64,000 nt of DNA, taken from positions 62,001 to 126,000 of the forward strand of contig NW_025963784.1 of the NCBI RefSeq assembly GCF_023055435.1, written 5' to 3'. Each line of letters opens with the position of its first letter. The stretch's first letter is position 1. Shown here piece by piece: positions 12,751 to 63,934 of the stretch. The notes beneath the pieces were generated by a model. It saw nothing but the letters and a program-made list of their open reading frames with translations, was not told the origin of the DNA and made no database searches. This DNA is from Haliotis rufescens (Eukaryota). The position numbers and the translations under genes are program-made.

Positions 12751-12764
12751 TGTGGTGGTCTTGT

Positions 12765-14665: not shown

Positions 14666-15582
14666 TTACACTGACAAGGAGGACCGCAGCTGCAGGATGT
14701 TGAGAATGTCCTCCCATTCGATCGTGCATCTCTCTTTACATGTCCAGAGTACTTTGACCAGGACCAGATAGGTGGCCGAACTGCCATTCCACTGCTTCCA
14801 TTAAGTGAGCATAATCAAGACCTGCATATACATTGAACATGGGTGTGCAACTTTGCCATGTTGGATAGCCACAATGCTGAGCCCAAGTTCAATCCCGACA
14901 TGCTCAAAGCCGATCCCGATATGTCTCGCAACAAGTCCGAGATCTTGTGGAGTTACAGGAGTCTTCAGTCTCTCGTTCACACGACGTGTTGAACCTACAC
15001 ACAAATCTGTATTACTTGACGTAACGCCAAAATCACCACATATAAACAGGTTCTGTTTATTGTTTGATTGATATGTGATATCGAATTAACGTATCTCAAA
15101 TACTGATCGATAATCATCATTACAAAATGACAGAAAAAGAAACTGTGTATATCCTCTGATATACGTTTATGTCGTCAAAATAATGACCACAAAGTTTATA
15201 GTAATACTGAACAAATGGGATATATAACCAAATTTCTGAAATTAAATTTTTCAAATTGAGACGTTCAATGTCTTACACAATTATCTTTTTAAAATGGGAA
15301 TTTAACGCACCTCTCCCTATGTTCTGATGGATGCAATACTCGATCAGCTCGTTGTTCGACTGGTGCATTCTCTAGAACGAAAAGCACACAATATCACGTT
15401 GGTCAATAGCTCTGTTACTGTATATCCACTATTAAGCATACAAAATGCACTAAGCTGAGGATTGAATTCTGTGTACATGTTATATTACTGCTAGCTTAAG
15501 TGTATAAACATCTTCATAGAAGAAAGTTATTAAGACGTACCTGATACTGAAGTCCTGAGAAGCACGAGACTAGATTCCCCAT
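14666..15582 (-). pseudogene. Acylated death-domain-only gene, type A, with nonsense mutation (exons 15582-15541, 15371-15311, 14994-14666)
   Basis: MGNLVSCFSGLQYQ / RMHQSNNELIEYCIHQNIGR / GSTRRVNERL..; GT-AG sites and phases 0/1 fit; TAA at 14803-14801 where the paralog has AAA (TKW). Confidence 0.8.
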
Positions 15583-15680: not shown

Positions 15681-15691
15681 GGGGAATCCCC
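15681..15691. promoter_or_regulatory. NF-kB/Rel-type site GGGGAATCCCC
   Basis: Matches GGGRNNYYCC; 99 bp upstream of the DD ATG at 15582; position conserved in paralogs. Confidence 0.65.
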
Positions 15692-22246: not shown

Positions 22247-22434
22247 TTACAGGGACTGCAGGATGTTGAGAATGTCCTCCCATTCAATCGTGCATCTCTC
22301 TTTACATGTCCAGAGTGCTTTGACCAGGACCAGATAGGTGGCCGAACTGCCATTCCACTGCTTCCATATCGTGAGCATAAATCAAGATCTGCATATACAT
22401 TGAACATTGGTGTGCAACTCTGCCCTGTTGAATA
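22247..22434 (-). pseudogene. 3' half of a type A death-domain exon, frameshifted
   Basis: QQGRVAHQCSMYMQIL then frameshift (gcataaatc vs gcataatc) to WKQWNGSSATYLVLVKALWTCKERCTIEWEDILNILQSL*; 5' half missing. Confidence 0.8.
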
Positions 22435-23227
22435 GAGCCTAGGCTATAGAGGAAAATACATTGTCTGTCTGTCTGTTCCAGTTGTTTGTATCTGCAACCC
22501 AACAATTAATTGAGGAGTTGATGGCTTCCGCATACCTAACAGTCATCATAAGTTGGGAGAGCGTTTTCGTATCTCACATGACTCCGGTGCAGGTGAGGAT
22601 TTGGCTGACAGCCGTTCCTTGATGAAACTAATACGTAACACCTGATCACGAACTGCACATGCCCCTTTGACAACCACGGTACAGTGTTTGAACCGATCTA
22701 GGTCCGAACATCCGACAAACGTCAACCATGCAAGACTATAAATATATGTCACTACACGGATTGACATACCGGCGTATATACATTGTAGCAGTGACTGGCA
22801 AAAGGTTCGTTGGAGTTATGATGTCACACTCAAGTGGTTTTCGTACACTATGACACCGATTGATGTTAAAATTAAAGGTAGGGTGCCGTTCCACAATATA
22901 TAATTGTCAATGCACGAGAATAAATAATTTTATGTATGAATGTACCACTGAAAATCAATGATGACACCAGGTGTTTACTTTTCGTATTTGAAAGTCAGAT
23001 TGAAACAAATTTCAATATCGAACGGAGCTGAAACAATGTTGATACAATGATTTTCAAGTAAGCAAACTCAGATCAACCAAATTTCAACATTAGAACAATG
23101 ACAATGCTGGGATACTTCAGTGGAGGTAGACATTATTATAAAGTATGAATATCTGTGTTAGTTTGGGTACAGGTGATTATGAAAATTGTAAAAACACATC
23201 CTCGGTGACGTGTAGTTCATTTTGTCA

Positions 23228-33000: not shown

Positions 33001-36000
33001 AAGGAAGGTTGTGGAGGTGTTATTAAAGAACAAGGCAAATGTGGATGAGAAAGATAAGGAAGGCCGCACACCTCTACATGATGCAGCCGACCAGGGACAT
33101 AGGAAGGTTGTGGAGGTGTTATTACAGAACAAGGCAAATGTGAATGAGAAACGGAATGATGGCAGCACACCTCTACATGATGCAGCTCACCAGGGACATA
33201 GGAAGGTTGTGGAGGTGTTATTACAGAACAAGGCAAATTTGGATGAGAAAGATAAGAAAGGCCGTACACCTCTACATGATGCAGCCTCCCAGGGACATAG
33301 GAAGGTTTTGGAGGTGTTATTACAGAACAAGGCAAATGTGAATGAGAAACGTAATGATGGCAGCACACCTCTACATGATGCAGCCTCCCAGGGACATAGC
33401 AAGGTTGTGGAGGTGTTATTACAGAACCAGGCAAATGTGGATGAGAAACGTAATGATGGGAACACACCTCTACATCTTGCAGCCTGGCAGGGACATAGGG
33501 AGGTTGTGGAGGTGTTATTACAGAACAAGACAAATGTGCATGAGCAACGTCAAGATGACAGCACACCTCTACATGAGGCAGCCTACCAGGGACACAGGGA
33601 GGTTGTGGAGGTGATATTACAGAACAAGTCGAATGTGAATGAGAAACATCAAGAAGGCAGCACACCTCTACATCTTGCAGCCTGGCATGGACATTGGGAG
33701 GTTGTGGAGGTGTTATTACAGAACAAGGCAAATGTGGATGAGAAAGATAAGGAAGGCCGCACACCTCTACATGATGCAGCCTGGCAGGGACACAGGGAGG
33801 TTGTGGAGGTGTTATTACAGAACAAGGAAAATGTGGATGAGAAAGATAAGGAAGGCAGCACACCTCTACATCGTGGAGCCTCCCAGGGACATAGAGAGGT
33901 TGTGGAGGTGTTATTACAGAACAAGGCAAATATGAATGAGAAACGGAATGATGGCAGCACACCTCTACATGATGCAGCCAACAAGGGACACAGGGAGGTT
34001 GTGGAGGTGTTATTACAGAACAAGGCAAATGTGAATGAGAAACGTAATGATGGCAACACACCTCTACATCTTGCAGCCGTCCAGGACCATTGGGAGGTTG
34101 TGGAGGTCTTATTACAGAACGAGGCAAATGTGAATGAGAAACGGAATGATGGCAGCACACCTCTACATAATGCAGCCTACCAGGGAGAAAGGAAGGTTGT
34201 GGAGGTGTTATTAAAGAACAAGGCAAATGTGGATGAGAAAGATAAGGAAGGCAGCACACCTCTACATGATGCAGCCAACCAGGGAGATAGGAAGGTTGTG
34301 GAGGTGTTATTACAGAACAAGGCAAATGTGGATGAGAAACGGAATGATGGCAGCACACCTCTACATGATGCAGCTTACCAGGGACATAGGAAGGTTGTGG
34401 AGGTGTTATTACAGAACAAGGCAAATGTGGATGAGAAAGATAAGGAAGGCCGCACACCTCTACATGATGCAGCCGACCAGGGACATTGGAAGGTTGTGGA
34501 GGTGTTATTACAGAACAAGGCAAATGTGGATGAGAAAGATAAGGAAGGCCGCACACCTCTACATGATGCAGCCGACCAGGGACATTGGAAGGTTGTGGAG
34601 GTGTTATTACAGAACCAGGCAAATGTGGATGAGAAACGTAATGATGGCAACACACCTCTACATCATGCAGCCTACCGTGGACAAACGGAGGTTGTGGAGG
34701 TGTTATTACAGAACAAGGCAAATGTGCATCGGCAACGTCAAGATGACAGCACACCTCTACATGATGCAGCCTACCAGGGACACAGGGAGGTTGTGGAGGT
34801 GTTATTACAGAACAAGGCAAATGTGAATGAGAAACGTAATGATGGCAGCACACCTCTACATGATGCAGCCTACCAGGGACATAGGAAGGTTGTGGAGGTG
34901 TTATTACAGAACAAGGCAAATGTGAATGAGAAACGGAATGATGGCAACACACCTCTACATGATGCAGCCTACCAGGGACATAGGAAGGTTGTGGAGGTGT
35001 TATTACAGAACAAGGAAAATGTGGATGAGAAAGATATGGAAGGCCGTACACCTCTACATGATGCAGCCGACCAGGGACATAGGAAGGTTGTGGAGATGTT
35101 ATTACAGAACAAGGCAAATGTGAATGAGAAACGGAATGATGGCAGCACACCTCTACATGATGCAGCCTACCATGGACATAGGAAGGTTGTGGAGGTGTTA
35201 TTACAGAACAAGGCAAATGTGAATGAGAAACGTAATGATAGCAACACACATCTACATCTTGCAGCCTGGCAGGGACATAGGGAGGTTGTGGAGGTGTTAT
35301 TACAGAACAATGCAAATGTGGATGAGAAAGATAAGAAAGGCCGCACACCTCTACATCGTGCAGCCTCCCAGGGACATAGGGAGGTTGTGAAGGTGTTATT
35401 ACAGAACAAGGCAAATGTGAATGAGAAACGGAATGATGGCAGCACACCTCTACATGATGCAGCCTACCAGGGACATAGGGAGGTTGTGGAGGTGTTATTA
35501 CAGAACAAGGCAAATGTGGATGAGAAAGATAAGAAAGGCCGCACACCTCTACATCTTGCAGCCTCCCAGGGACATAGGGAGGTTGTGGAGGTGTTATTAC
35601 AGAACAAGGCAAATGTGGATGAGAAACGGAATGATGGCAGCACACCTCTACATGATGCAGCCTACCAGGGACATAGGGAGGTTGTGGAGGTGTTATTACA
35701 GAACAAGGCAAATGTGAATGAGAAACGTTATAATGGCAGCACACCTCTACATGATGCAGCCTCGCAGGGACATAGGGAGGTTGTGGAGGTGTTATTACAG
35801 AACAAGGCAAATGTGGATGAAAAACGTAATGATGGCAGCACACCTCTACATCTTGCAGCCTACCAGGGACATAGGGAGGTTGTGGAGGTGTTATTACAGG
35901 ACAAGGCAAATATGGATGAAAAACGTGATGATGGCAACACACCTCTACATGAGGCAGCCTACCAGGGACGTAGGGAGGTTGTGGAGGTGATATTACAGAA

Positions 36001-36610
36001 CAAGTCAAATGTGAATGAGAAACATCAAGACGGCAGCACACCTCTACATCTTGCAGCCTGGCATGGACATTGGGAGGTTGTGGAGGTGTTATTACAGAAC
36101 AAGGCAATTGTGGATGGGAAAGATAAGGAAGGCCGCACACCTCTACATGATGCAGCCTGGCAGGGACATAGGAAGGTTGTGGAGGTGTTATTACAGAACA
36201 AGGCAAATATGGATGAGAAAGATAAGGAAGGTTGCACACCTCTACATGATGCAGCCTGGCAGGGACACAGGGAGGTTGTGGAGGTGTTATTACAGAACAA
36301 GGCAAATGTGGATGTGAATGATAAGGAAGGCAGCACACCTCTACATGATGCAGCCTGGCAGGGACATAGGAAGGTTGTGGAGGTGTTATTACAGAACAAG
36401 GCAAATGTGGATGAGAAAGATAAGGAAGGCAGCACACCTCTACATGATGCAGCCTGGCAGGGACACAGGGAGGTTGTGGAGGTGTTATTACAGAACAAGG
36501 CAAATGTGGATGAGAAAGATAAGAAAGGCTGCACACCTCTACATGATGCAGCCTGGCAGGGATACATGGAGGTTGTGGAGGTGTTATTACAGAACAACGC
36601 AAATGTTTAA
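24001..36610 (+). CDS. Copy 2 gene: CG-1-like domain + Ulp1/C48-like protease + STAND-associated helical region + about 70 ankyrin repeats, about 3300 aa (exons 24001-24181, 24944-26013, 26681-26815, 27323-27480, 28021-28138, 28240-28558, 28683-36610)
   Basis: All junctions are GT-AG with matching phases (1,0,0,2,0,1), giving a 9909-nt open frame. Motifs WLTDEIMDIYL, LMPVN..HWVLLV..VVNS, QSDGHSCG. An alternative phase-1 donor exists at 28399. Confidence 0.8.
27414..27562 (+). repeat. 78-bp tandem duplication of an exon end and its splice donor
   Basis: GAACAGTGGGCGTGG..TGTACAACACT(G/A)GAGGTAG starts at 27414 and 27492; donors at 27481 and 27559. Confidence 0.85.
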
Positions 36611-42878: not shown

Positions 42879-44007
42879 TTACACTGGCAAGGAGGACCGC
42901 CACTGCAGGATGTTGAGAATGTCCTCCCATTCGATCGTGCAACTCTCTTTACATGTCCATAGTGCTTTGACCAGGACCAGATAGGTGGCCGAACTGCCAT
43001 TAAACTGCTTCCATTTAGTGAGCATAATCAAGATCTGCATATACATTGAACATGGGTGTGCAACTCTGCCCTGTTGGACAGCCACAATGCTGAGCCCAAG
43101 TTCAATCCCGACATGCTCAAATCCCATCCCGATATGTCTCGCAACAAGTCCGAGATCTCGTGGAGTTAAAGGAGTCTTCAGTCTCTCATTCACACAGCGT
43201 GTTGAACCTACACAGAAATCTGTATTACTTGATGTAACACCAATTCTACCACAAAGGCTCACATAAACAGGTTTCTTTCTGTTTTATGTGATTGACATGT
43301 GGTATCGAATTAACCTTTATTTATCTCCAATGCTCATCGATATTCCAAATAAGCAATACAAATTGACGGAAAAAGAAGTTGCACAAATCGTCCCATATAC
43401 ATATATGTCATCATAATAACGATCAAAATATGTTGAAAGTTATGCTGAACACATATGGCATATATTGCCAAATTTCTGAAATGAAATCATCAAATCATGA
43501 TAAAGAATGTCGAACAAAATTATCAGTTTAATATGGGCAGTTATAATTAACGCACCTCTGCTTATGATCTGTTGGATGTAATACTCGATCAGCTCTTTGC
43601 TTGAAAGGTGCATTCTCTAGAACGAAAAACACACACTATCAATTGTGTGTTATATGATATGAACGAGTATTAGTATTTCCTGAAAGGCTTTGAACTCAAA
43701 TACAGTATTGTTCGTCAGGTGGGATCAAACTTCCACATTATAACACTTGGTAACGTACCACCACTGAATATGGAATGATAAACAGAGACAATGTCTGCAG
43801 GAACAGTAGTGAGTATATAAAGACTTTGAACAGTATTTTCGTTACCTTATATCCACTATTTAGCATACAGAATGCCACTTGTTTAGTGTTAAACGATGTG
43901 TACATATATTACTACCATTAGTGTACGTTAATGAACATGTCTAAAAGGGAGTTATTAAGACGTACCTGATACTGAAGTCTGGAGAAGCACGAGGCAATAT
44001 TCCCCAT
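42879..44007 (-). CDS. Acylated death-domain-only protein, type A, 143 aa (exons 44007-43966, 43616-43556, 43207-42879)
   Basis: MGNIASCFSRLQYQ / RMHLSSKELIEYYIQQIISR / GSTRCVNERL..LVARHIGMGFEHVGIELGLS..Q..MLTKWK..G..AT..LVKAL; canonical splice sites, open frame. Confidence 0.85.
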
Positions 44008-44104
44008 GCTGCCTATATATACTCGTATGACACTGATGTACACTACTCTGTCTGTTGAACTGATCTGACTGTATCAAGAGCTCTAAGTTACATGTGAGCA
44101 CTGC

Positions 44105-44114
44105 GGGAAGCCCC
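44105..44114. promoter_or_regulatory. NF-kB-type site (GGGGCTTCCC on the - strand)
   Basis: Matches GGGRNNYYCC; 98 bp upstream of the ATG at 44007. Confidence 0.6.
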
Positions 44115-45157
44115 TACACAAGAGGGGACACTACTTCTCACTCTCTCTCGCGATTGCTTCAACCAAAGATTTAGGAATTTCGGATTTTCGGATTTTTGGA
44201 TATCCAAACTGATATAAAGGCGGAGTGGTGTGTAGTGGAGTAAGAGATTATAATAAACCTACATGGGGGTCATACCTCTTGCACTTTAAGTTTGTTGTTA
44301 CATACTATGACCAACCATAATGAGGAAATAATATTACAGCAGTGTCGATAACTGACGCGTGGTCACAAAAGCAACATGCGTATGCCGCTTACACAGGGTT
44401 ACGATGGTTTCTGAAGTAGGAGTGTTGTCGCCAATACAATCTATTACTGTAGTGTATAGATGAGAGAGCAGTCACAACTTCACCGAGATGCCTCTCTCCA
44501 CTACGTCCAGCTGTTCAGTCAAAAACCAAGCCATCCCGTTCAAGGTGCCATGACTTATATGTTAGTCTTGCATGGTAGACCATAGACATGGGAATATTGT
44601 CACAAAAATGGTCTATTAAAAAGGATAATAGGTCTCAATCAAAATAAGTATCTAGAAATCATGACAATACGTGTGATAATGCAAGACAAAACTAAATAAA
44701 TGTTGAATGCAAAAGCTGTGGTACATTGTTGATGCTGGGGGACCTGGTCAACGTGTAGGATATATGTCGGCGTTGTTTTGGCCTTGATATGGAATACCAT
44801 CTAATATATATATAAATTAGGCTTTGTTTGTAAACTGCAATCAGCAGCCTTAAACTAAAAGAACAAGACCATAGAATGGAACAGAACTTGATGTTGAACG
44901 TGTCGGCAATACGAAAATGTCCATGATTGGACTATAATAATGCTTGGATATCTTCTCCAGCTGTAGTCAAGTCGTCTTTATGGACAGACAGACAGACAAA
45001 CTATTCAAAACGAACACTACAAGGTCTACGCATCATGAATAAAGTTGACAATAATTTCACATACATTCTAATCGTTGACTTTCTTTGTGACGATCAACAA
45101 CATCAGATCAGATTGTGGATGACAGAAGAACCTAATTAGTTATCACTTGCCCATTGA

Positions 45158-45329
45158 GGGGCGGTAGGGTAGTCTAGTGGTTACAGTGTTCGCTCATCAC
45201 GCCTAAGATCCGGGTTCGAATCCACACATGGGTACAATGTGTGAAGCCCATTTCTGGTGTCTCCGGCCGTGATATTGCTGAAATATTGCTTAAAGCGGCG
45301 TAAAACATTACACCCTCACTCACTCACTC
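45158..45329 (+). mobile_element. tRNA-derived SINE with (CTCA)n tail
   Basis: Same family as 23228-23393. Confidence 0.85.
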
Positions 45330-45787
45330 TTCCCCGTGAACACATGAGGCAGAGGACGGACGGACGGACAATAAGCAGTTGCTCAACTTTAATGTCTGTC
45401 TGGGATGATAATTGTAATATTGTGGTCTCCAGCTGGAGCTGCACTACAGCGTTTCTATTGCTGTTGATATGTAGAATATCCGTGAAACAACTGAATCTGT
45501 ATGTTAAGCTAGGGCTGAACTACAGAAGACACAACATCTTCAGTTAATCAGGCATGCTTACAGAATCTTCTATAATTAGTGTAAAACGTAGCATTCATGA
45601 GATGTAATCTTCGATTCGCTGATGTTATTATTCAGTCGATCAGGAAAGATAAATTTCGTTGCACAGACCAAAACTAAGCACCCACCCATCGTCAACTACA
45701 TAGAATTATAATTCTACTTCATTTGTTACATGTAGGTTATAGTAATTTTCGCATATCATATCACACACGAACTGAAGAAACGACATA

Positions 45788-46457
45788 TATATTTATGAAA
45801 TCCGGAAATCCTGTTTCTATATATGACATTTGTTCCTTTCTCAATACCAGCTTGTCATCAGTTGGTGTGTGGCATTGTAAAGGAATGACATTTGGAAACA
45901 CACGTATACTTGACCTCATGGAAAGAAATCATTGTACCGCTCTTTGCCGGTCACTGGTGGTTAATATGAAAGGATGGGTTATCTTTCGTGCCAATTCTCG
46001 GGAAAGAAGAAAAGACTCAAACACATTCCTTGGTGTGTTGAACTCAAAAGTTGTAGACTTTTAAACTTTTATATTTATGAAATGACATTTGTTCCTTTCT
46101 CAATACCAGCTTATCATCAGTTGGTGTGTGGCATTGTAAAGGAATGACATTTGGAAACACACGTACTTGACCTCATGAAATACAATTCTTGAATTACGTC
46201 ATCTTTAAATAGAACCCTTTCTGTAATTGGAATAGATCTGGACTTAACGCATATCATAAGCATGTGTTCAATTTGTTCAACTTCAATGAAAGCAAAAGAA
46301 AACGCTGGACACAAATGAAATCATTGTACCGCTCTGTGCCGGTCACTGGTGGTTAATATGGAAGGATGGGTTATCTTTCGTGCCAATTCTCGGGAAAGAG
46401 CAAAAGACTCAAACACATTGCTTGGTGTGTGGAACTCAAAAGTTGTAGACTTTTAAA
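45788..46457 (+). repeat. Local tandem duplication (45788-46066 and 46070-46457; second copy about 140 bp longer internally)
   Basis: Shared TGACATTTGTTCCTTTCTCAATACCAGC..GTTGTAGACTTTTAAAC. Confidence 0.8.
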
Positions 46458-46845
46458 CATTTTTGATAGTTGTTATAAATAAATACCAATAATCACATCT
46501 TTACCAGTCTTTCATATGTACAAACACCAACAATATTCAGAAAGTCGTGCATTCATATATACATGTGCACACATTCGAACACATTCATGCACTGGAAACA
46601 TATGATGCAACCCCTGACTTCCCTCTCTGATCCCAGCACATCCTTACCTTATGGCTGTATTATCAGCATGCTACACGTAGGTCACCAAACATTGTATTTC
46701 AGACACTACCGTAGCGTCATGTCTTTACATATGATAGTATGTCCCACCACACTTAACATGCATGACACGAAGTATGACCCTTATATGTGTCACACAGTGA
46801 TGGCCGTCTCTTTCACATGCACTGCAGTTAATATAGAAGGCCTAC

Positions 46846-46887
46846 CTGATATCGAAATCCTAACAAGCATGACCTAATATTCCCCAT
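46846..46887 (-). CDS. Orphan DD-family first exon MGNIRSCLLGFRYQ
   Basis: 42 nt, ATG, CAG|GTAGG donor, upstream TATA and kB site; no DD exon of its own found. Confidence 0.55.
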
Positions 46888-46958
46888 GATCATCATCCCA
46901 GCTACGAATCCGCAGCGTGTGGTGTTGTGACACAGTTAACACAACGTAGCCAGCCCAG

Positions 46959-46992
46959 TTTATACATGCATGACTGATGGGAGGGGACTCCC
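46959..46992 (-). promoter_or_regulatory. TATA-like box plus kB site GGGGACTCCC (46983-46992)
   Basis: Same layout as the other DD promoters. Confidence 0.6.
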
Positions 46993-47990
46993 TTGTACAA
47001 TTTACCGGCACATTGTAAATCTCAGACGTGTGTAACCAACAAATTACTGTCATTTCTCTAAATAACGGACTTCGGATTTCCGGGTTTTCGGCTATGAATC
47101 ACCATGTCATTCAGTTACATAGATTGTCAGATGTGCTCCTGTCGTTTCCAGAGTGAATGAGCGTTTCAATTTCATTCGAAAATAGGACCCAATGTTTGTT
47201 AAGCAATTGGCACACTCTCACTGCAGATACTAATCTATCGGACTAGGACTATTGTTTGTCTGAAATGGGGGTTGCGCACTACGCAATAAAACGAAACGAA
47301 ACACTTCGGGCATATCGCAGGGAGTTCATGCAAGATGTGAACAAGACAATCCGGCAATCCGACATAGTATATGACGTTTCGTTCATTTGTCAAAATCAGT
47401 TCATAACACTGTGGTTGAGACAAGCAGTTAGGTCTAGGTAGGATACGGACCTCATGTTATACTACTCATCAGGCATTTAGTACAGGCTGGGCCCTGAGGT
47501 ATATATGAAAACTAAGTGGTATTAAATGTAATGGAGATGAAGGAAACTCCCTTACAAACAACATGAAGGTTTATCTGAAAGCGTACGACGCCGTTGGGTT
47601 CGGATGACACCCACACAGCTGAATGACCAACTCTGACCACCTGATTCGCTCCAGTCAGCTCTTGCAGCAACCATAGGATACTGGTGTCTTATTGATCACC
47701 GGAATATACACAGGGCAGATGCAATGTAGTATAATCACATGATCATCATCAGTAGCATAAGTTTGGACTCTTGGAACTACTACCGGACTGTCAGTAACAC
47801 CACGTAGACTAACATAGACTCAAACATCCATATGTGCAATGTATAAATGAACAAAAAAAACTGTAGTTAAAAGCAACATTTATTCGTCAAACATAAGGAA
47901 ATATCAAACATGTACGTTATTCTTAACATATACTAGAGCAGTGAGTCGACAGTGTTGTTGTTAGGTCAGGGGTGCACTACAAATGACACA

Positions 47991-48744
47991 CTAAGTCGAT
48001 GGTGATTGGAGAATGTTTAGTATGGCATCAATTTCGAGCGTACATCTACCTCTGCATCTCCACAACGCTCTGACGAGCACAAGGCCAGTGGCAGATCTGC
48101 CATTCCTCTCCTTCCACTTGGTGAGCATGTGTAGGGTCTGCATATAAAGTGAATTATGGTGTGAAACTTTGCCTTGTTCGATCACCACAAGATTGAGTCC
48201 AAGTTCGATTCCAATAGATTCAAACCCGATCCCAATATGATTTGCCACCAGGCTGACACCTTTCTGAGAAACAGGGATTCTCAGTCTTTCCTCATTTACA
48301 GGGCCTACAAAACAAATGTGAATGAAAATTATAGATGAGTCTTGAGTTTTGAGTAATTTTGTTTTTGACTTTTCAAAATTATATTTTAACAAACACTTTA
48401 CAAATCAGAACAGATACGGAAAGTATGTTGCGAGACATAGTACATCTTAATATATGCAGAGGAGAATACATATTCTCTCCACGTCTACAGTATAGCATAT
48501 GTGTACTTAAGATATTATTCGAAGTTCATATTGTATATTTAACATAATCAAATTGATCAAGATGAAAAGGACATATTGAATGACATTAAATAAACGAACC
48601 TGTCAATGTGACCAATGGATTATATGAACGGATCATCTGGTTGTGTGGCTGGTGAAGTCTCTGGAAGGGAGATGTTTATACCATCACATGTCATGTATAA
48701 AATTAAATGTTGCAAGCTTATGTCATATATACTTTTCGTGCTGT

Positions 48745-48779
<35 letters not shown>

Positions 48780-48997
48780 ACACACGCATACACGCACACA
48801 CACACGCACACGCACACGCACACACGCACGTGCGCACGCACGTACACACACACACAGAAATAAAGACAGACTGTATAAGACCATGCAACCACAAACGCGC
48901 ACATTGACATGCAAACAATGAGCTCGTTAGTTTCTAATAATTAAAGTTCACCTACCCGATACCTAAATCCAGACCAGCATGACACATAATTCCCCAT
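47991..48997 (-). CDS. Acylated death-domain-only protein, type C, 138 aa (exons 48997-48956, 48660-48600, 48304-47991)
   Basis: MGNYVSCWSGFRYR / RLHQPHNQMIRSYNPLVTLT / GPVNEERLRIPVSQKGVSLVANHIGIGFESIGIELGL..MLTKWKERNGRSAT; phases 0/1 fit. Confidence 0.85.
48748..48856. repeat. (CA)n/(CACG)n microsatellite in intron 1 of the type C gene
   Basis: Visible directly. Confidence 0.95.
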
Positions 48998-49061
48998 TGT
49001 CGGCTCTGTACATACGTTTTACCCTCGGCTTTACTGATCTGCTGTCCGTTCAATCGCTTGC

Positions 49062-49094
49062 TATTTATATGTAGGCTTTGTGAAGGGGATTTCA
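49062..49094 (-). promoter_or_regulatory. TATA box (TATAAATA on -) plus kB-like GGGGATTTCA (49085-49094)
   Basis: 65-97 bp upstream of the ATG at 48997. Confidence 0.55.
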
Positions 49095-49284
49095 CTAAAT
49101 TTGTCGACAATAATTTCTGTTGCAGAAAACCAAAACCGCCGAGTTTTTATTGACGGGCGTTTATTGAAGCAAAACGCATGCTATACATCATAAATCCGAA
49201 AATCCGACTTGTTGTACATTTACTTCACAATGTCAACTAGTTGGCGGAAACGTCTTTAGGCTGTGTGTGTGTGTGTGTTCTTTG

Positions 49285-49462
49285 NNNNNNNNNNNNNNNN
49301 NNNNNNNNNNNNNNNNNNNNNNNNNNNNNNNNNNNNNNNNNNNNNNNNNNNNNNNNNNNNNNNNNNNNNNNNNNNNNNNNNNNNNNNNNNNNNNNNNNNN
49401 NNNNNNNNNNNNNNNNNNNNNNNNNNNNNNNNNNNNNNNNNNNNNNNNNNNNNNNNNNNNNN
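49285..49462. other. Assembly gap
   Basis: Run of N. Confidence 1.
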
Positions 49463-52151
49463 AACAACTTCAAACATTTCATGAAGATTTTCCTGCAGAA
49501 TGTTTCCTTCGCAAAAATGAAATTTGAAAAGGAACACATTGTATTATATCCAGGAAATACTTAATGTGACAAAATTACGAGTTGAATGGGCTTGAAAACA
49601 TGTAGAGCTACATAAGAGGGAACAATAGTGGTGGTGTGGATTTGCATACTGTGGAAATGATACAATCATGTTGTTCACCAAGTAAGCTGTCTCGTCATGT
49701 AAGTGAGCACCAACACACTTGAAGGTTGTCCTTTTCAATAGTACATAATATAAGATGAACATATATAGGTGAGTAAGTCAGTTCGCATTGAGAGCTCAAT
49801 GGGATATAACAACATAGCGAAGAGCTTCACGTGAACTGATTGTGAAGGCCGAACCTTCTGCTGTTTGATTGACCTCGATGTGAACAGACAGCAGTTGAAT
49901 CATCTCACATCAACTCCCTACACATCAAGTTGTGATTAAAGTGACATGCGTGATGATAAAGGAATATCTGCTATACTCTCATCCTGTTGAATTGAATGTA
50001 ATGGTTACAAAGAGGAATATAGAAAAATGGCTATAGTGTACAACAATGTCACATAATACCAAATAGACTCAACATATTATGTTTTAGATATGGTACTAAC
50101 GTTACAGTTGGTGAAGTGTGCTTTGGTTATTGCAGAGCATGTGTCGGATCTTAAATAACTGACAATTGAATAACTATTTTGAAATGCATTGATATTTTTG
50201 AATGGAATTGTGACATGTTAATAAATTAAGTTGGAACGGAGAATCTCTGACTGACTATGTCGGATTTTCGGACTAGCTAAGTCACGAGACAATTAAACGT
50301 TGTTGTCGTCTCTTGAATGACTTGGCGATCGATTACGCCTGTCCAATACTCTGAAGCGGAGATTTTTTTATCGAAAAGTACAGCATAAGTAGTATTTCAT
50401 TTCAATGGTTTTCATAGTTATATTGCAGGTATTTTACATGAAGTAAAATTTTAAACTCCCGCTTTTGACAATGTTTTTGAACCCAAGGGGTAAAAAAACC
50501 CTTAACATCCACGTTAGTGTTCCTGGATATAATGCTAGTAATATGTGACGTGACGAAAATTTCACGTGGACCAATATGCCTGCAGCTTCAACTTATGGCA
50601 TCTATATTTTCATGTTGTTTATGTACTTAAACGCATGTGCATATCATTCAAATTTCCTGGAAAGACACATTTTTCTTACAACTTAGCTTAAATTCAATCA
50701 AGGTTCGGCATCACAGGCCTAATCAAGTCATCCCAGAAATAGGAAATTAGGTATTTTTTTTACTAAATATGACATGCTACCTGTCAAAGTGATTTGCAAT
50801 TATATCCCATACTATGACCTTTACAGGGAGATTTCACACCTCCTTATTCACTAACTTAAATGGATCGGGTGGTCATGCTTGGTGACTTGGTTGACAGAGT
50901 GGAGTAGTAACCCGACCACGTGAGTCATTGCTCATGATAGTGATCCCTGGATTCTTTGGTCGAGACTCGATACTTTACAGGCCACCGTGATATGTCAGGA
51001 GTATTGCTGGTAGCGGCATTTGGCAACAACAAATAGCTTTTATTAAATTTGTGAGAGTGGCGGGTGCTTGTGGTAGAGCATTACATGCTAATCATTCTGT
51101 GGATTACCTGGTGTCATCGCTGATTTTCACTGATTCATTCATTTACTTCTCATCACTATTTTGATCTTTTCCATGCATAAAGAAAGTGACAGTATTTCAG
51201 GCTTCTTTATAATTGAGACCGTTACTTGTAATTGTGTCATTCGAATTCTTTATCAAGCTAGTTGTAGAATCTAAAAGGGTATATTATTGAATTGTCTGTG
51301 ACGGGTGCCACCAGTGGGACAGGATACCTTTTCGCGAACTTCTGGTATCATCTCTATTTGATTTCATACCTGAGAACCACTACAGCCCATGACCAGTATT
51401 TGCAAACTTCAAACCAGGAAATATTCTTACAAATAGAATACAGCTACTATAGAAAGTAAAACACAAATTGTCGTCCACAATCAATCAGCAGGATTCTACG
51501 ACCGGCAAACCCTTGTGAAATTGTTCCAAAGAAGAGACAACAGAGAAACCGCTCATTTGGAACAACATAACACAAATATTTTGACTGTTCAATCGTGACG
51601 GGACACTGTAAAATCAAATCATATTGTGAGACGCAATTATGTCTCCGGAATTTCGGATTACGGATGACGTTTAGGGCGCATGTAATCATCCCTCGCTAGT
51701 TCTTCCTCAAATATCACAAGAGACAGAAAGACAAGTTTTTACAAAAGGCATCACAACAATTTATTAAAAGCATTTATTCTCAACACATACAAATTAAATC
51801 ACAATGTATTACAAACGGAAAATAAAATAATGTTCAAATGAAGAGTGTTCAGTGTGCAACTTGAGGAAGCAGAAAATCAATCAGATCAGTCAGGATCCCA
51901 ATTTATGTACAAAATCCTCAGTGAACCTAGCATCTCGACTCGATATTTCAAAGCGGGAACCCAATGAATCAATGATGACTGTACATGAGAAGAGTGTTCA
52001 GTGCAGCGCTCGTATATGAGAAAACATAAATGTAGGCATGATTTCTCTGTATGTGGTCGGGGAAACTCAGTGAAGCATTACTTATATACCCACTCGTGTA
52101 TTCACAGCGTAAAGCAAGACAGTGTCAGGTGAAAACAGCTCTCCGACTTGA

Positions 52152-53297
52152 TTACACAGACACAGTGGACGGTCCCTGAAGGATGTTGAGAATGTCCTCC
52201 CACTCAATGGTACACCTGTCATTGCATCTCCACAGTGCTCTGACAAGGACAAGGATGGTTGCAGTTCTCCCGTTCTTCTCCTTCCACTTTGTAAGCATGT
52301 GCACAACTTGCATGTATAGTGAATAAGGGTGTGCAAACGTGACTTGTTCGATAACCACGAGAGTAAGTCCAAGTTCGATGCCAACAGACTCGAACCCGAT
52401 CCCGATGTGACTTGCAACAAGACTGAGATCTCTTCCAGATACTGGAGTATCCAACATCTCGTCATTTACAGCATATGCTTGGTTCCAGTGTGTTGGCCCT
52501 ACAACATTAAACTCACAATAAACTACCAATAGACTTGTGTACATTTTGTTTGATAGATGATGTAACAACATTCGGTTCGCTTTCATTAATCCAAATTATT
52601 TCACTAAACAAAGAAAAATACGATACATACATACAGTAATTTAAAAAGAAATTAATGGGGTACACATAGAACTAAACTTCCTAAAATAGAATTATAAGAC
52701 AAACAGATTGTTTAAATAAAGAACTAAAGGATGACTATGCTTGTCATAAGAGGCGACCAGCGGGATCGGGTGGTCAGGCTCGCTGACATGGTTGATGCAT
52801 GTTATTGTATCCCAATTGCGTAAATCGATACTCATGATGTCAATCAGTGGATTGTCTGGTCCAGATTCGATTATTTACAGACCACCGTCATATAGCTGGA
52901 ATATTGCTGCGTGCGACGTTAAACAAAAAACAAGCAAACCAAATAACAAACAATGTAATTTAACGTACATGTAACTCTCTCTGTCAGATTGGGTTCATTT
53001 TGGCAGTTTATCGAGTTCTCTGTGTTGGACAGCCTCTGGAATCGAATAAACACAGTTTAAAACACGATTGATAGCTACGCCATCACAGCAATAAAACAAT
53101 AAAGATAATCTTACATAAACTAAACAAGACAATGCAATGCCAAATTCACGTGAACATGTACACACGCATTACACATATTGACACGCTAAAGTTCGAATAG
53201 GGAAAGCATGTGAAATATGCCTATATACATATGTATACATAACATCTTGACCCACCTGATATCGGGATATTGGCCAGCATGAAACAATATTACCCAT
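52152..53297 (-). CDS. Acylated death-domain-only protein, type B, 151 aa (exons 53297-53256, 53035-52969, 52498-52152)
   Basis: MGNIVSCWPISRYQ / RLSNTENSINCQNEPNLTERVT / WPTHWNQAYAVNDEMLDTPVSGRDLSLVASHIG..; open frame, GT-AG sites. Confidence 0.82.
52730..52950 (+). mobile_element. 5'-truncated SINE in DD intron 2 (duplicate 63618-63840; related fragments about 50863-51030 and 61533-61700)
   Basis: GACTATGCTTGTC(A/G)TAAGAGGCGAC..CCGTCATATAGCTGGAATATTGCTG plus (AAAC)n tail. Confidence 0.7.
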
Positions 53298-53383: not shown

Positions 53384-53415
53384 TTTATATATCGGACTAG
53401 CATAAGGGGATTCCC
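53384..53415 (-). promoter_or_regulatory. TATA box (TATATAAA on -) plus kB site GGGGATTCCC (53406-53415)
   Basis: Perfect kB consensus 109 bp upstream of the ATG at 53297. Confidence 0.7.
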
Positions 53416-57602: not shown

Positions 57603-57750
57603 NNNNNNNNNNNNNNNNNNNNNNNNNNNNNNNNNNNNNNNNNNNNNNNNNNNNNNNNNNNNNNNNNNNNNNNNNNNNNNNNNNNNNNNNNNNNNNNNNN
57701 NNNNNNNNNNNNNNNNNNNNNNNNNNNNNNNNNNNNNNNNNNNNNNNNNN
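57603..57750. other. Assembly gap
   Basis: Run of N. Confidence 1.
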
Positions 57751-58957
57751 ACAGGAAATAAATAGTAAAGTATAAATAGGTTTGTGGGGAACTCCATGCC
57801 AGTATGTTTCATCCAGTATGGGTGTCAGCGGGCTCCTAATTGTCGCTCTGCATGTTCTCGTGTTTAGAGCTAAGTGTTTGTAATTTTCTTTAATATTCAA
57901 ACCGGAAGACAATCTTTTCATAAGTATCAATCGTGGAAAAATATGCATTTCATTTGAATAAATATTATGGTTCAACAATAGTGTCAACTCCCCAGAGGGA
58001 CAGGTAAAACAATGTGAACTCTCCCTACCTCATATTGGCTTTCTATTGTGTAAGCCACACTCTATAAGTACACAAAATAATGAGGCTGTTATATAATTAT
58101 TAACACGTTATAATGTTAAAATTTTCCCAAATAGTTACCCTGCAAAGCCCTGCACTGGTCTTCTATCACTGCCCCCCACGTGAGACGTATATAATCCATG
58201 TTCGGGGCCGTCATGTTTGTTCAGATTCATATATACGATCACATCAGTACAAATAAACTTGGAGAAATTGCTTCGCATCAAGATATAGTTTTATTGGATG
58301 TGCTTTTATTGACATATGTATTGATTATTTCCATGTCCACTGCAAAACATGCTTTAATGCGTACTTTACAACTGTCACGTGTCTGTGTACATGCATGTTT
58401 ATATATTATTTTCTCTATGTCATTTTGGTGACTTCAGACTATTAGTCTGGTCTCTTGTTATGGTCAGGTATAAAGACGCTTTCTCTGATAACAGACATAG
58501 CTGTGCAGACTGTTTAATTATTCATATAATTGTGAACACCCGATGTCATCACTGATGTTCAGTGATCCTTCTACATGTATCATTCATCCTCATCCTGCCT
58601 CTTTACGCCAAATGGAATCTGTTTCGGCAGCTAATCGAGACTGGTTATTCTCTGGTGTTCACGTCTTATATTTAAATGTGTAACTTTTTAACATATGAAT
58701 AATTACAGCACGTATAGATCATGATCTGATTTGTTACATGAGATCGCAATAAATTCTTCACTAATGGGATAAAATCTACCGATTTAGACATATTTGCCCT
58801 CATAGCATTGCGCTATCGCGTGTTGTCTGTGATAAACACAAACGAATACTCTTGACCTACTCAAAGGGAGTTTCCTCCTTCAGTCAATGGGCTGACAGTG
58901 GCCCACATTGTTTATCACAGATGTTGAATGGCATCCCATGCGTGAATACAGTCACGG

Positions 58958-59030
<73 letters not shown>

Positions 59031-60266
59031 GAGCACTAAGTGACATAGAAACAGGAAATAAATAGTAAAGTATAAATAGGTTTGTGGGGAACTCCATGCC
59101 AGTATGTTTCATCCAGTATGGGTGTCAGCGGGCTCCTAATTGTCGCTCTGCATGTTCTCGTGTTTGAGAGCTAAGTGTTTGTAATTTTCTTTAATATTCA
59201 AACCGGAAGACAATCTTTTCATAAGTATCAATCGTGGAAAAATATGCATTTCATTTGAATAAATATTATGGTTCAACAATAGTGTCAACTCCCCAGAGGG
59301 ACAGGTAAAACAATGTGAACTCTCCCTACCTCATATTGGCTTTCTATTGTGTAAGCCACACTCTATAAGTAGACAAAATAATGAGGCTGTTATATAATTA
59401 TTAACACGTTATAATGTTAAAATTTTCCCAAATAGTTACCCTGCAAAGCCCTGCACTGGTCTTCTATCACTGCCCCCCACGTGAGACGTATATAATCCAT
59501 GTTCGGGGCCGTCATGTTTGTTCAGATTCATATATACGATCACATCAGTACAAATAAACTTGGAGAAATTGCTTCGCATCAAGATATAGTTTTATTGGAT
59601 GTGCTTTTATTGACATATGTATTGATTATTTCCATGTCCACTGCAAAACATGCTTTAATGCGTACTTTACAACTGTCACGTGTCTGTGTACATGCATGTT
59701 TATATATTATTTTCTCTATGTCATTTTGGTGACTTCAGACTATTAGTCTGGTCTCTTGTTATGGTCAGGTATAAAGACGCTTTCTCTGATAACAGACATA
59801 GCTGTGCAGACTGTTTAATTATTCATATAATTGTGAACACCCGATGTCATCACTGATGTTCAGTGATCCTTCTACATGTATCATTCATCCTCATCCTGCC
59901 TCTTTACGCCAAATGGAATCTGTTTCGGCAGCTAATCGAGACTGGTTATTCTCTGGTGTTCACGTCTTATATTTAAATGTGTAACTTTTTAACATATGAA
60001 TAATTACAGCACGTATAGATCATGATCTGATTTGTTACATGAGATCGCAATAAATTCTTCACTAATGGGATAAAATCTACCGATTTAGACATATTTGCCC
60101 TCATAGCATTGCGCTATCGCGTGTTGTCTGTGATAAACACAAACGAATACTCTTGACCTACTCAAAGGGAGTTTCCTCCTTCAGTCAATGGGCTGACAGT
60201 GGCCCACATTGTTTATCACAGATGTTGAATGGCATCCCATGCGTGAATACAGTCACGGAATGAGAG

Positions 60267-60330
<64 letters not shown>

Positions 60331-60712
60331 ACTAAGTGACATAGAAACAGGAAATAAATAGTAAAGTATAAATAGGTTTGTGGGGAACTCCATGCCAGTA
60401 TGTTTCATCCAGTATGGGTGTCAGCGGGCTCCTAATTGTCGCTCTGCATGTTCTCGTGTTTGAGAGCTAAGTGTTTGTAATTTTCTTTAATATTCAAACC
60501 GGAAGACAATCTTTTCATAAGTATCAATCGTGGAAAAATATGCATTTCATTTGAATAAATATTATGGTTCAACAATAGTGTCAACTCCCCAGAGGGACAG
60601 GTAAAACAATGTGAACTCTCCCTACCTCATATTGGCTTTCTATTGTGTAAGCCACACTCTATAAGTACACAAAATAATGAGGCTGTTATATAATATAATA
60701 TAATAACGGAAT

Positions 60713-60803: not shown

Positions 60804-60849
60804 TGCAAACAATGAACTCGTTAGTTTCTAATAATTAAAATTCACCTAC

Positions 60850-60891
60850 CCGATACCCAAATCCGGACCAGCAGGAGACATAATTCCCCAT
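60850..60891 (-). pseudogene. Orphan type C first exon MGNYVSCWSGFGYR, with TATA and kB-like GGGGATTTAC (60977-60986)
   Basis: Duplicate of 48956-48997; downstream exons are replaced by the 1.3-kb repeat in this assembly. Confidence 0.6.
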
Positions 60892-63036: not shown

Positions 63037-63934
63037 TTACACGGATACAGTGGACGGTCCCTGAAGGATGTTGAGAATGTCCTCCCACGCAATGGTACAC
63101 CTGTCATTGCAACTCCACAGTGCTCTGACAAGGACCAGGCTGGTTGCAGTTCTCCCGTTCTTCTCCTTCCACTTTGTAAGCATGTGTACAACTTGCATGT
63201 ATAGTGAACATGGATGTGCGAAAGTCACTTGTTCGATAACCACTAGAGTAAGTCCAAGTTCGATGCCAACAGACTCGAACCCGATCCCGATGTGACTTGC
63301 AACAAGGCTGAGATCTCGTCCAGATACAGGAATATCCAGCATCTCTTCATTTACAGCATATGCTTGGTTCGGGTGTCTTGGCCCTACAACATTAAACTCA
63401 CAATAAACTACCTATTTACTTGTGTACATTTGTTTGATAGATTATGTTACAACATTCGGTTCACATTCATTATACCAAATTAGCTTTATCAAACAAAAAG
63501 GTATGGTACATACATAAAGTAACGTAAACAGAAATCATTTGGTACACATAGAACTAAACTTCCTGAAAGACAAGCAGATTGTTTAAATTCAATAAAACTA
63601 AAACATCAAACTAAAAGGCGACTATGCTTGTCGTAGGAGGCGACTAACAGGATCGGGTGGTAAGGCTCGCTAACATGTTTGTTGCATGTCATCGTATCCC
63701 AATTGCGTAGATCGATACTCCTGATGTTAATCGCTGGATTGTCTGGTCCAGACTCGATTATTTAAAGATCGCCGTCATATAGCTGGAATATTGCTGAGTG
63801 CGACATTAAACAACAAACAAACAAAAAAACAAGCAAACAAAATAGCGAACAATGTAATGTAACGTACTTGTAACTCTCTCTGTCAGATTGGGTTCATTTT
63901 GGCAGTTTATCGAGTTCTCTGAGTTGGACAGTCT
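63037..63934 (-). CDS. Death-domain-only protein, type B, exons 2-3 (63934-63868, 63383-63037); exon 1 expected beyond the window
   Basis: Open frame; paralogous to 52152-53035 with the same splice sites. Confidence 0.8.

What the first reader, a model, noticed from the sequence alone, without database searches (positions are those of the whole stretch)
42879..53297. Family of predicted myristoylated/palmitoylated death-domain-only proteins
Six 42-nt first exons, too short for the ORF track, encode MGNLVSC, MGNIASC, MGNIRSC, MGNYVSC (twice) and MGNIVSC: Gly2, Asn3, Ser6 and Cys7 are invariant. MGxxxS is the established N-myristoyltransferase motif, and a nearby Cys is a typical palmitoylation site. 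A highly variable 61-67-nt linker exon then joins one conserved DD exon, resembling RAIDD/IMD-type domains from recall, with no other domain. Inference: membrane-tethered adaptors or decoys analogous to vertebrate CARD-only and PYD-only proteins.
Basis: partly seen in the sequence, partly recalled or inferred. Interest (0 to 1): 0.85.

Follow-up and report, generated by a model that had tools for sequence, protein, structure and literature searches.

The report
Abalone lipid-anchored death-domain gene family
This stretch of the red abalone genome holds part of a very large tandem family of tiny three-exon genes, each with a probable fatty-acid membrane anchor signal, a free-evolving tether and one death domain. 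They are most likely inducible immune or cell-death signalling adaptors or decoys, but nothing about their expression or lipidation could be tested here.

Summary
Six 42-nt MGNxxSC first exons lie on the minus strand, each followed by a GT donor. The same motif occurs 107 times in the genome against 0 for the reversed control.

Only four of the six continue into a 61-67-nt linker exon and a death-domain (DD) exon.
- gA (143 aa), gB (138 aa) and gC (151 aa) are intact.
- The copy at 15.5 kb has a premature stop.
- The first exons at 46846 and 60850 are orphans.

The last exon is a true DD: Pfam PF00531, AlphaFold pLDDT 89.7, best fold match RAIDD DD. It is under purifying selection (dN/dS 0.12-0.24 at dS above 1), while the linker evolves neutrally. 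Gly2 and Asn3 are almost never lost; Ser6 and Cys7 are less strict.

Every promoter carries a kB(-like) site about 100 nt upstream of the ATG. The family is Haliotis-specific and is annotated only as "uncharacterized" or "CRADD-like" models.

The assembly gap at 49285-49462 is intergenic. The scan noted this family before on other windows of this genome (s1-810247 and others).

Verdict: a new variant of a known kind; lipidation and function are inferred.

The parts
53256..53297 (-). gC exon 1: coding part MGNIVSCWPISRYQ, GT donor
   Evidence: in-frame stop 27 nt upstream
52969..53035 (-). gC exon 2: 67-nt linker, AG/GT, ends in phase 1
52152..52498 (-). gC exon 3: death domain plus stop; whole protein 151 aa
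   Evidence: (PF00531 E 2.6e-6)
48956..48997 (-). gB exon 1: MGNYVSCWSGFRYR
48600..48660 (-). gB exon 2: 61-nt linker, identical in peptide to RefSeq model P0008
47991..48304 (-). gB exon 3: death domain plus stop; whole protein 138 aa
43966..44007 (-). gA exon 1: MGNIASCFSRLQYQ
43556..43616 (-). gA exon 2: 61-nt linker
42879..43207 (-). gA exon 3: death domain plus stop; whole protein 143 aa
15541..15582 (-). g15k exon 1: MGNLVSCFSGLQYQ (paralog of gA)
15311..15371 (-). g15k exon 2: 61-nt linker
14669..14994 (-). g15k death-domain exon with a premature TAA at 14801-14803 (98-aa product); probable pseudogene, dN/dS 0.98 against gA
46846..46887 (-). Orphan first exon, MGNIRSC type. It has no linker or DD exon of its own and two in-frame ATGs directly upstream. 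Half of the genomic copies of this type carry a stop at codon 6.
60850..60891 (-). Orphan first exon, MGNYVSC (duplicate of the gB 5' end), followed by a 1.3-kb tandem repeat and a gap instead of linker and DD exons
63037..63383 (-). DD exon of a further C-type gene. Its linker exon is at 63868-63934. Its first exon (MGNTVSS, Cys7 to Ser) lies just beyond the window end.
   Evidence: locus L026
17941..18281 (-). C-type DD exon with an open frame and intact acceptor, but no first or linker exon within 1 kb upstream (relic)
22253..22445 (-). Fragment of an A-type DD exon
53406..53415 (.). kB consensus site at -109 to -118 of the gC ATG, with a TATA box at -94
44105..44114 (.). kB consensus site at -98 to -107 of the gA ATG
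46983..46992 (.). kB consensus site at -96 to -105 of the orphan first exon at 46846
15681..15691 (.). Palindromic kB site at -99 to -109 of the g15k ATG
49285..49462 (.). Assembly gap: intergenic, 288 nt upstream of the gB ATG, beyond its kB-like and TATA elements; not filled

Best explanation
The window holds part of a Haliotis-specific tandem family of small three-exon genes (138-151 aa).

Shown here:
- Exon 1 carries a short 5' UTR and 14 codons beginning MGNxxSC.
- Exon 2 encodes an unconstrained tether of 20-22 residues.
- Exon 3 encodes one six-helix death domain of the RAIDD/ankyrin/PIDD kind and nothing else.
- The death domain and the N-terminal Gly2/Asn3/Ser6/Cys7 are under purifying selection.
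- A kB(-like) site sits about 100 nt upstream of each start codon.

Inferred:
- After methionine removal, N-myristoyltransferase acylates Gly2, and a DHHC enzyme palmitoylates the neighbouring Cys. This fixes the protein to a membrane.
- The flexible linker then presents the death domain, which joins or caps helical death-domain assemblies of partner proteins at that membrane.
- Transcription is driven by Rel/NF-kB, so the genes act as an inducible feedback element of immune or cell-death signalling. A dampening decoy is somewhat more likely than an initiating adaptor.

In this window three genes are intact (gA, gB, gC). One is a pseudogene, two first exons are orphans, and two DD exons are relics.
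For: Motif and exon structure.
- Six first exons with GT donors.
- 107 genomic matches against 0 for the control.
- AG/GT borders and an open frame are kept in 26 of 30 related loci.
- RefSeq models of H. rufescens, H. cracherodii, H. rubra and H. asinina show the same exon 1-linker-DD join in 11 of 14 proteins.

Start codon. In 5 of 6 copies an in-frame stop lies 24-81 nt upstream with no ATG between. A TATA box lies at -71 to -94 in the B, C and D types.

Constraint on the motif.
- Freeing codon 2 adds only 6 array copies.
- Freeing codon 3 adds none.
- Freeing codon 7 adds about 18.
- Gly2 uses all four GGN codons, and Ser6 uses TCA, TCG and TCC.
- Types A, B and C differ by dS above 1 yet keep the motif.

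Death domain.
- Pfam PF00531 above the gathering score in 4 of 5 exons.
- PDB profile hits: ankyrin-3 DD 2e-9, CRADD 1e-6, PIDD 5e-4.
- AlphaFold model with pLDDT 89.7 and six helices.
- Best Foldseek match RAIDD DD 2o71, TM 0.87 normalised to the target, rmsd 1.7.
- dN/dS 0.12-0.24.

Linker. dN is about equal to dS.

kB sites. 15 matches against 2.9 expected. Exact sites lie at -96 to -118 in 4 of 6 promoters, the other two have one mismatch, and 21 of 29 further loci have an exact site.

From established knowledge:
- MGxxxS/T with a small uncharged residue 3 is the NMT substrate rule.
- ARF1, eNOS, recoverin and calcineurin B begin MGN.
- Cys near a myristoyl-Gly is a usual palmitoylation site.
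- The CARD-only protein INCA caps caspase-1 filaments (PMC11874512).
Against: - No transcript-derived protein of the family is in the protein collections.
- Ser6 is replaced by Leu, Arg or Phe in other copies and species. Cys7 is Tyr in a subtype of roughly 15 copies and in RefSeq P0013. Gly2 is lost in 6 copies.
- Residues 8-12 are aromatic or hydrophobic rather than the polar or basic stretch common in NMT substrates.
- In the A type the only TATA-like box lies 14-22 nt before the ATG. The RefSeq A-type model P0007 starts at the Met inside the linker exon, so A-type proteins may lack the MGN start.
- The H. asinina model P0004 puts MGN internally, after a 59-aa extension.
- Copy numbers are inflated by assembly redundancy.
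- The kB match is a consensus match, not a binding test.
- No partner is known.
Confidence: 0.55

Rival explanations
1. The genes are real death-domain-only proteins, but the MGN N-terminus is not lipidated. The conserved Gly2/Asn3/Cys would then serve something else, for example an N-terminal glycine degron, a protein contact or a translation-start context. The proteins would act as soluble DD adaptors or decoys.
For: Position 6 is Leu, Arg or Phe, and position 7 is Tyr, in apparently intact copies. Residues 8-12 are hydrophobic or aromatic, which is unusual for NMT substrates. Asn3, which NMT does not require, is the most strictly kept residue.
Against: Gly2 directly after a validated start codon is kept across paralogs with dS above 1 and uses all four Gly codons. 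The six window peptides satisfy the classical myristoylation rule. MGN starts are typical of known myristoylated proteins (own knowledge).
Confidence: 0.2
2. The array is mostly dead DNA. The small DD units would have been carried along passively by segmental duplication of the giant ankyrin gene, few or none would be expressed, and the database models would be ab initio predictions.
For: - In the window only 3 of 6 first exons belong to intact genes. There are also orphans, relics and a stop-bearing copy.
- Half of the MGNIRSC-type exons carry a stop.
- gA against g15k gives dN/dS 0.98.
- No transcript-derived sequences were found.
Against: - DD exons show dN/dS 0.12-0.24 between old paralog types and 0.11-0.19 among C-type copies with dS of about 0.17 or more.
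- Splice sites and frames are kept in 26 of 30 loci.
- The family is kept in four Haliotis species, including the distant H. asinina.
- The promoter kB and TATA elements are conserved although the flanking DNA is 27-37% diverged.
Confidence: 0.1
3. The three-exon models are incomplete. Transcripts would be longer or combinatorial: orphan first exons could serve as alternative promoters spliced to a neighbour's linker exon, or there could be read-through between tandem units. In that case the products would not simply be 'anchor-linker-DD'.
For: - The orphan first exons at 46846 and 60850 have their own kB(-like) site and donor but no downstream exons of their own.
- The 46846-type exon always sits 2.3-2.9 kb upstream of an A-type first exon in other units.
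- There is a DD exon with an intact acceptor but no first exon at 17941-18281.
Against: Every DD exon ends in a stop codon. An in-frame stop precedes the ATG in 5 of 6 first exons. RefSeq models in four species are three-exon, 128-149 aa.
Confidence: 0.1

Closest known systems
CRADD/RAIDD death domain (PIDDosome adaptor; PDB 2o71, 2of5)
   Same: It is the best structural match (TM 0.87 normalised to the target, rmsd 1.7 A, 25% identity). The profile E-value is 1e-6. NCBI names several family members 'CRADD-like'.
   Different: RAIDD has an N-terminal CARD that recruits caspase-2. These proteins have no CARD, only a 36-residue N-terminal stretch with an acylation-type motif. They are not orthologs: true ~210-aa CARD-DD-sized hits are separate proteins.
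Ankyrin-G/B/R death domains and PIDD death domain (ZU5-UPA-DD proteins)
   Same: Ankyrin-3 DD gives the best sequence-profile match among solved structures (2e-9). Ankyrin-2, ankyrin-1 and PIDD also match.
   Different: In those proteins the DD is the C-terminal module of large ZU5-UPA proteins. Here the DD stands alone.
CARD-only and PYD-only proteins (COPs and POPs, e.g. INCA, ICEBERG, POP1-3)
   Same: They are single death-fold domains without an effector domain, arose by tandem duplication, and are lineage-specific. INCA caps a filament (PMC11874512).
   Different: They use a different death-fold subfamily, have no lipid-anchor motif, and number a few genes rather than dozens. The decoy function is untested here.
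TRAM/TICAM2 (myristoylated TIR adaptor) and dual-acylated N-termini of Src-family kinases, G-alpha subunits and eNOS
   Same: A Met-Gly start that fits the NMT rule, with a nearby Cys. This serves to place a signalling module on a membrane (own knowledge).
   Different: The attached module is a TIR, kinase or GTPase domain, not a death domain. Acylation is demonstrated for those proteins but not here.
Membrane-targeted Tube and Pelle death-domain proteins of Drosophila (experimental Src-myristoylation fusions)
   Same: They show that tethering a DD protein to the membrane is enough to drive Toll-pathway signalling (own knowledge). That is the logic proposed here.
   Different: Those are artificial fusions. 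The abalone genes would be a natural version, and could equally act as inhibitors.

Membership tests
Death domain superfamily (Pfam PF00531) | Sequence match to the Death profile above the curated cut-off | tested here: met
   Scores of 24.4-27.9 bits against the cut-off of 22.6 for four exons. gA scores 21.4, just below.
Death domain superfamily (Pfam PF00531) | Six-helix bundle fold matching solved DDs | tested here: met
   AlphaFold pLDDT 89.7 with six helices. The top 40 Foldseek matches are almost all DDs, with RAIDD first.
CRADD/RAIDD orthologs | N-terminal CARD followed by a C-terminal DD | tested here: not met
   Only 36 residues precede the DD and there is no CARD. Pfam finds Death only.
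N-myristoylated proteins (NMT substrates) | Gly at position 2 of the true translation start | tested here: met
   Gly2 is present in all six. An in-frame upstream stop without an ATG is present in 5 of 6; the exon at 46846 has upstream ATGs. The transcription start site itself was not observed.
N-myristoylated proteins (NMT substrates) | Residues 3-7 fit G-{EDRKHPFYW}-x(2)-[STAGCN]-{P} | tested here: met
   All six window peptides fit (the rule is from own knowledge). Some genomic copies with Leu, Arg or Phe at position 6 do not.
N-myristoylated proteins (NMT substrates) | Covalent myristate on Gly2 | not testable with these tools
   Needs metabolic labelling or mass spectrometry.
S-palmitoylated dual-acylated proteins | Cys close to the myristoyl-Gly | tested here: met
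   Cys7 is present in all six. It is kept in 107 of about 125 array copies and is Tyr in one subtype.
S-palmitoylated dual-acylated proteins | Thioester-linked palmitate and membrane residence | not testable with these tools
   Needs acyl-exchange or 17-ODYA labelling, plus imaging.
Death-fold 'domain-only' decoys (COP/POP-like) | A single death-fold domain with no effector domain | tested here: met
Death-fold 'domain-only' decoys (COP/POP-like) | Inhibits assembly of a multi-domain relative | not testable with these tools
   No partner was identified. Complex prediction was not used because no specific pair is claimed.
Rel/NF-kB target genes | kB consensus site in the proximal promoter | tested here: met
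   An exact GGGRNWYYCC lies at -96 to -118 in 4 of 6 promoters and a one-mismatch site in the other 2. The window has 15 matches against 2.9 expected. 21 of 29 related loci have an exact site. Binding and induction were not tested.

The most novel reading that the evidence does not exclude
The small kB-driven, lipid-anchored death-domain genes would form, together with the co-duplicated giant protease-ankyrin gene and/or the expanded ZU5-UPA-DD (PIDD/ankyrin-like) genes of this genome, a lineage-specific membrane-based death-fold signalling system. A diversifying set of dozens of anchored DD modules would nucleate or cap PIDDosome-like assemblies. That would be a natural counterpart of the artificial membrane-tethered Tube and Pelle experiments, and a kind of immune module not described in any animal.
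Probability: 0.2. Interest if true: 0.8.

Novelty: new variant of a known kind. Interest (0 to 1): 0.55.

Why it matters
Death-fold 'domain-only' regulators are known for CARD and PYD in mammals. I found no family of stand-alone death domains with a built-in lipid-anchor signal in the literature searched: searches returned nothing, and the 2025 death-fold atlas does not mention lipidation.

If the acylation is real, abalone would show that membrane tethering of a bare death domain is a natural, selectable design. Fly geneticists used that design artificially. Here it would also have been amplified to dozens of kB-controlled copies.

This would give a handle on mollusc immune and cell-death signalling, which matters for abalone disease. 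The proteins are small and easy to express, so the idea is directly testable with G2A and C7S mutants.

Tried and rejected
Tools that did not run:
A full census of intact genes along contig C6 was therefore not made.

Steps that gave little or nothing:
- The first AlphaFold run, on a shallow 12-sequence alignment, gave pLDDT 41.8 and was discarded. The run on 85 sequences was used.
- Paper searches for lipidated death-domain proteins, abalone DD families and the RefSeq LOC identifiers found nothing relevant.
- A second protein search with a full-length RefSeq member added no new species or transcript-derived sequences.
- ARAGORN found no tRNA in the tRNA-like repeat.
- Poly(A) signals downstream of the stop codons exist, but they are too frequent in this AT-rich DNA to count as evidence.

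Steps left out on purpose:
- Complex prediction was not sent, because no specific binding pair is claimed.
- Joined (spliced) protein models were never sent to a search or fold tool. Exons were searched by reference, one by one, and frames across junctions were only checked inside scripts.
- The gap was not filled.

Readings rejected:
- CRADD orthology, because there is no CARD.
- 'All six first exons head intact genes', because only three do.
- 'Ser6 and Cys7 invariant' as a property of the whole family.


Full report
**Source and scope.** The window is G000:C6:62001-126000. The closest proteins are RefSeq models of Haliotis rufescens, H. cracherodii, H. rubra and H. asinina. The H. rufescens records sit on contigs of 1,025,956 and 241,659 bases, which fits contigs C6 and C72 of this assembly. 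An earlier follow-up of this scan (s1-810247) also calls the genome red abalone.

**Observation.** A codon-level search finds nine MGN triplets in the window.
- Six of them are followed by xx-Ser-Cys, lie on the minus strand, and end after exactly 42 nt at a GT: 15541-15582, 43966-44007, 46846-46887, 48956-48997, 53256-53297 and 60850-60891.
- tblastn with the downstream exon finds seven related exons on the same strand. Five intact ones match Pfam Death, four of them above the gathering score.
- Linker exons of 61 nt (gA, gB, g15k) or 67 nt (gC) have AG/GT borders and end in phase 1. They join exon 1 to the DD exon in frame.
- The resulting products are gA 143 aa, gB 138 aa and gC 151 aa.

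I checked the joins only inside scripts.

**The gap.** The gap at 49285-49462 lies 288 nt upstream of the gB ATG. It is distal to gB's kB-like site (-97) and TATA box (-72), and 2.7 kb downstream of the gC stop codon. No exon or intron crosses it, so the question of frame does not arise. The two flanks align, in order and orientation, to the paralogous unit at 60803-60984 and 60992-61353. I did not fill it. Continuity could not be tested with reads.

- Only four first exons have a linker and a DD exon.
- g15k carries a premature TAA in its DD exon (98-aa product). Its dN/dS against its paralog gA is 0.98, so it is a probable pseudogene.
- The exon at 46846 (MGNIRSC) has no downstream exons of its own and has two in-frame ATGs directly upstream. 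It belongs to a subtype in which half of the genomic copies have a stop at codon 6. It is either a relic or an alternative first exon of gA.
- The exon at 60850 is a duplicate of the gB 5' end. A 1.3-kb tandem repeat and a second gap follow it.
- The window also holds a DD exon without a first exon (17941-18281) and a DD fragment (22253-22445).
- A further C-type gene has its DD and linker exons at 63037-63934. Its first exon (MGNTVSS) lies just beyond the window (locus L026).

**More than chance, and the scale of the family.**
- The pattern ATG-GGN-AAY-(9)-TGY-(15)-TAY-CRG-GT occurs 107 times in the 1.33-Gb assembly (106 on one strand), against 0 for the reversed control. All listed places lie on C6, C72 and the 41.58-41.92-Mb end of C594.
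- The DD exon gives at least 150 matches in the same places.
- Part of this is assembly redundancy. Several 3.3-kb loci on C6, C72 and C594 are identical base for base. The haploid number is probably about half, still dozens.
- In 26 of 30 fetched C-type loci, the first exon, both splice-site pairs and the DD frame are intact.

**Constraint.**
- Between the A, B and C types the DD exon has dS of 1.0-1.6 and dN/dS of 0.12-0.24. Among C-type copies with dS of about 0.17 or more, dN/dS is 0.11-0.19.
- The linker has dN about equal to dS (0.50/0.52 and 0.45/0.54). It is a free-evolving tether, not a target of demonstrable positive selection.
- One pair of subtypes (L012, L023) has DD dS of 0.025 while the introns differ by 25-29%. 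This points to gene conversion or exchange of the DD exon.
- For the N-terminal motif I freed one residue at a time in the genome-wide pattern. Freeing Gly2 adds 6 array copies (Ala, Arg, Glu, Ser). Freeing Asn3 adds none. Freeing Cys7 adds about 18, mostly a Tyr7 subtype also seen in RefSeq P0013.
- Position 6 is Ser in about four fifths of the listed copies, and otherwise Leu, Arg or a stop.
- Gly2 uses all four GGN codons and Ser6 uses three TCN codons, so the constraint acts on the protein.
- Orthologous models in other species read MGNIVLC, MGNISC and MGNIQFC. Gly2, Asn3 and a Cys at position 6 or 7 are the stable core.

**Start codon and promoter.**
- In five of the six exons an in-frame stop lies 24-81 nt upstream with no ATG between.
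- The kB consensus GGGRNWYYCC occurs 15 times in the window against 2.9 expected.
- Four of the six promoters have an exact site at -96 to -118. The two B-type promoters have a one-mismatch site at -95 to -98.
- A TATA-like box follows at -71 to -94 in the B, C and D types.
- In 21 of 29 further C-type loci the palindrome GGGGAATCCCC sits at -119 and TATATA at -94, although the upstream DNA is otherwise 27-37% diverged between subtypes.
- The A type has no TATA box at that place, only one at -14 to -22. The RefSeq A-type model P0007 begins at the Met inside the linker exon. Whether A-type proteins carry the MGN start is therefore open.

**The domain.**
- A profile of the family hits, among solved structures, ankyrin-3 DD (2e-9), CRADD (1e-6), ankyrin-2 and -1, PIDD (5e-4), FADD and TRADD.
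- With an 85-sequence alignment, AlphaFold gives pLDDT 89.7 and six helices.
- Foldseek ranks RAIDD DD first (2o71, TM 0.87 normalised to the target, rmsd 1.7 A). PIDD, p84, TRADD, ankyrin-G, FADD and RIPK1 DDs follow.
- 'RAIDD-type' is therefore supported as a resemblance. Orthology is excluded because there is no CARD.

**Distribution.** An exhaustive HMMER search of 1.84 billion representatives finds only four at E below 1e-30, all Haliotis. A gap then follows down to 5e-23. None of the other small DD-only hits starts with MGN. The family is known only as 'uncharacterized' or 'CRADD-like' gene models. I found no paper on it.

**Mechanism.**
- Shown: gene structure, domain, selection pattern and promoter motifs.
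- Inferred from the established NMT rule and from known dual-acylated proteins: myristoylation of Gly2 and palmitoylation of Cys7 fix the protein to a membrane.
- Inferred: the unconstrained linker acts as a tether.
- Inferred: the DD joins or caps helical DD assemblies.
- Inferred: kB control makes the system inducible.
- A dampening decoy (like the CARD-only protein INCA; PMC11874512) and an initiating adaptor (like membrane-tethered Tube and Pelle) cannot be told apart here. I lean slightly towards the feedback decoy.
- Likely partners, by DD similarity, are PIDD/ankyrin-type ZU5-UPA-DD proteins. Another note of this scan says these are also clustered in this genome (s1-815155, not checked).

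**Context.** The segmental duplication 3184-15768 ~ 23982-44195 carries both the giant ankyrin-repeat gene (a 2703-aa open frame with about 68 ANK repeats and no DD) and an A-type DD gene placed tail-to-tail with it. This agrees with the co-duplication described in s1-810247. A functional link is not shown.

**Limits.**
- As a result, expression, RNA splicing, the transcription start, acylation, localisation and partners are all untested.

**Verdict.** The feature is real and is a new variant of a known kind: a stand-alone death-fold regulator with a lipid-anchor signal, massively amplified. The scan had already noted it on other windows of the same genome. Interest 0.55.

Noticed in passing
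window 28499-36610 (+) and 6287-8677 (+); duplication 3184-15768 ~ 23982-44195: A giant ankyrin-repeat gene: a 2703-aa open frame with about 68 ANK repeats and no death domain found. It is present twice, the first copy shorter, and is co-duplicated with an A-type death-domain gene lying tail-to-tail about 5 kb downstream.
   Followed up: partly
window 57751-60694, next to the gap 57603-57750: A 1.3-kb tandem repeat of about 2.3 copies, 99.5% identical. It lies directly downstream of the orphan first exon at 60850, where the linker and DD exons would be expected.
   Followed up: no
window 15746-15765, 44173-44200, 47081-47092, 49195-49206, 51646-57, 62542-53 and others: The motif TCCGAAAATCCG, often in tandem, occurs 19 times against 0.39 expected. 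It sits about 165-205 nt upstream of most MGN start codons (inverted in gB) and also at places without a recognisable gene. Its function is unknown and it is not a canonical ISRE.
   Followed up: partly
loci L012 against L023 (G000:C6:461128-464472 and 214855-218199): The DD exons differ at synonymous sites by only 0.025, while the introns differ by 25-29% and the linker by about 0.5. This is a signature of gene conversion or exon exchange that homogenises the death-domain exon between subtypes.
   Followed up: partly
G000 contigs C6, C72 and C594:41.58-41.92 Mb: Several 3.3-kb loci are identical base for base between these contigs (L005=L006, L009=L010, L027=L028=L029). Two loci 590 kb apart on C6 differ at 4 of 3345 bases. 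The array is partly assembled more than once, so copy counts are upper bounds.
   Followed up: partly
protein P0139 (Mercenaria mercenaria XP_053383887.1): A bivalve NLR-like protein of 1086 aa starts MGSCLS, a strong dual-acylation-type motif, followed by a Death domain (89-158) and a NACHT domain. This is a possible independent case of a lipid-anchor motif next to a death domain.
   Followed up: partly
protein P0026 (Haliotis rubra XP_046582321.1): A 136-aa death-domain-only protein with a Cys-rich N-terminus (CTLCGCC, then YRRYQ as at the end of the MGN exon). It is possibly a palmitoylated relative without the MGN start, or a mis-modelled first exon.
   Followed up: no
window 45158-45329 and 23229-23400: A tRNA-like repeat, probably a SINE, 85% identical between the two places. 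ARAGORN calls no tRNA.
   Followed up: partly
window 48745-48860 and 49265-49284: A (CA)n/(CACG)n microsatellite lies in intron 1 of gB, and a (GT)n run abuts the assembly gap. The second is a plausible cause of the gap.
   Followed up: no
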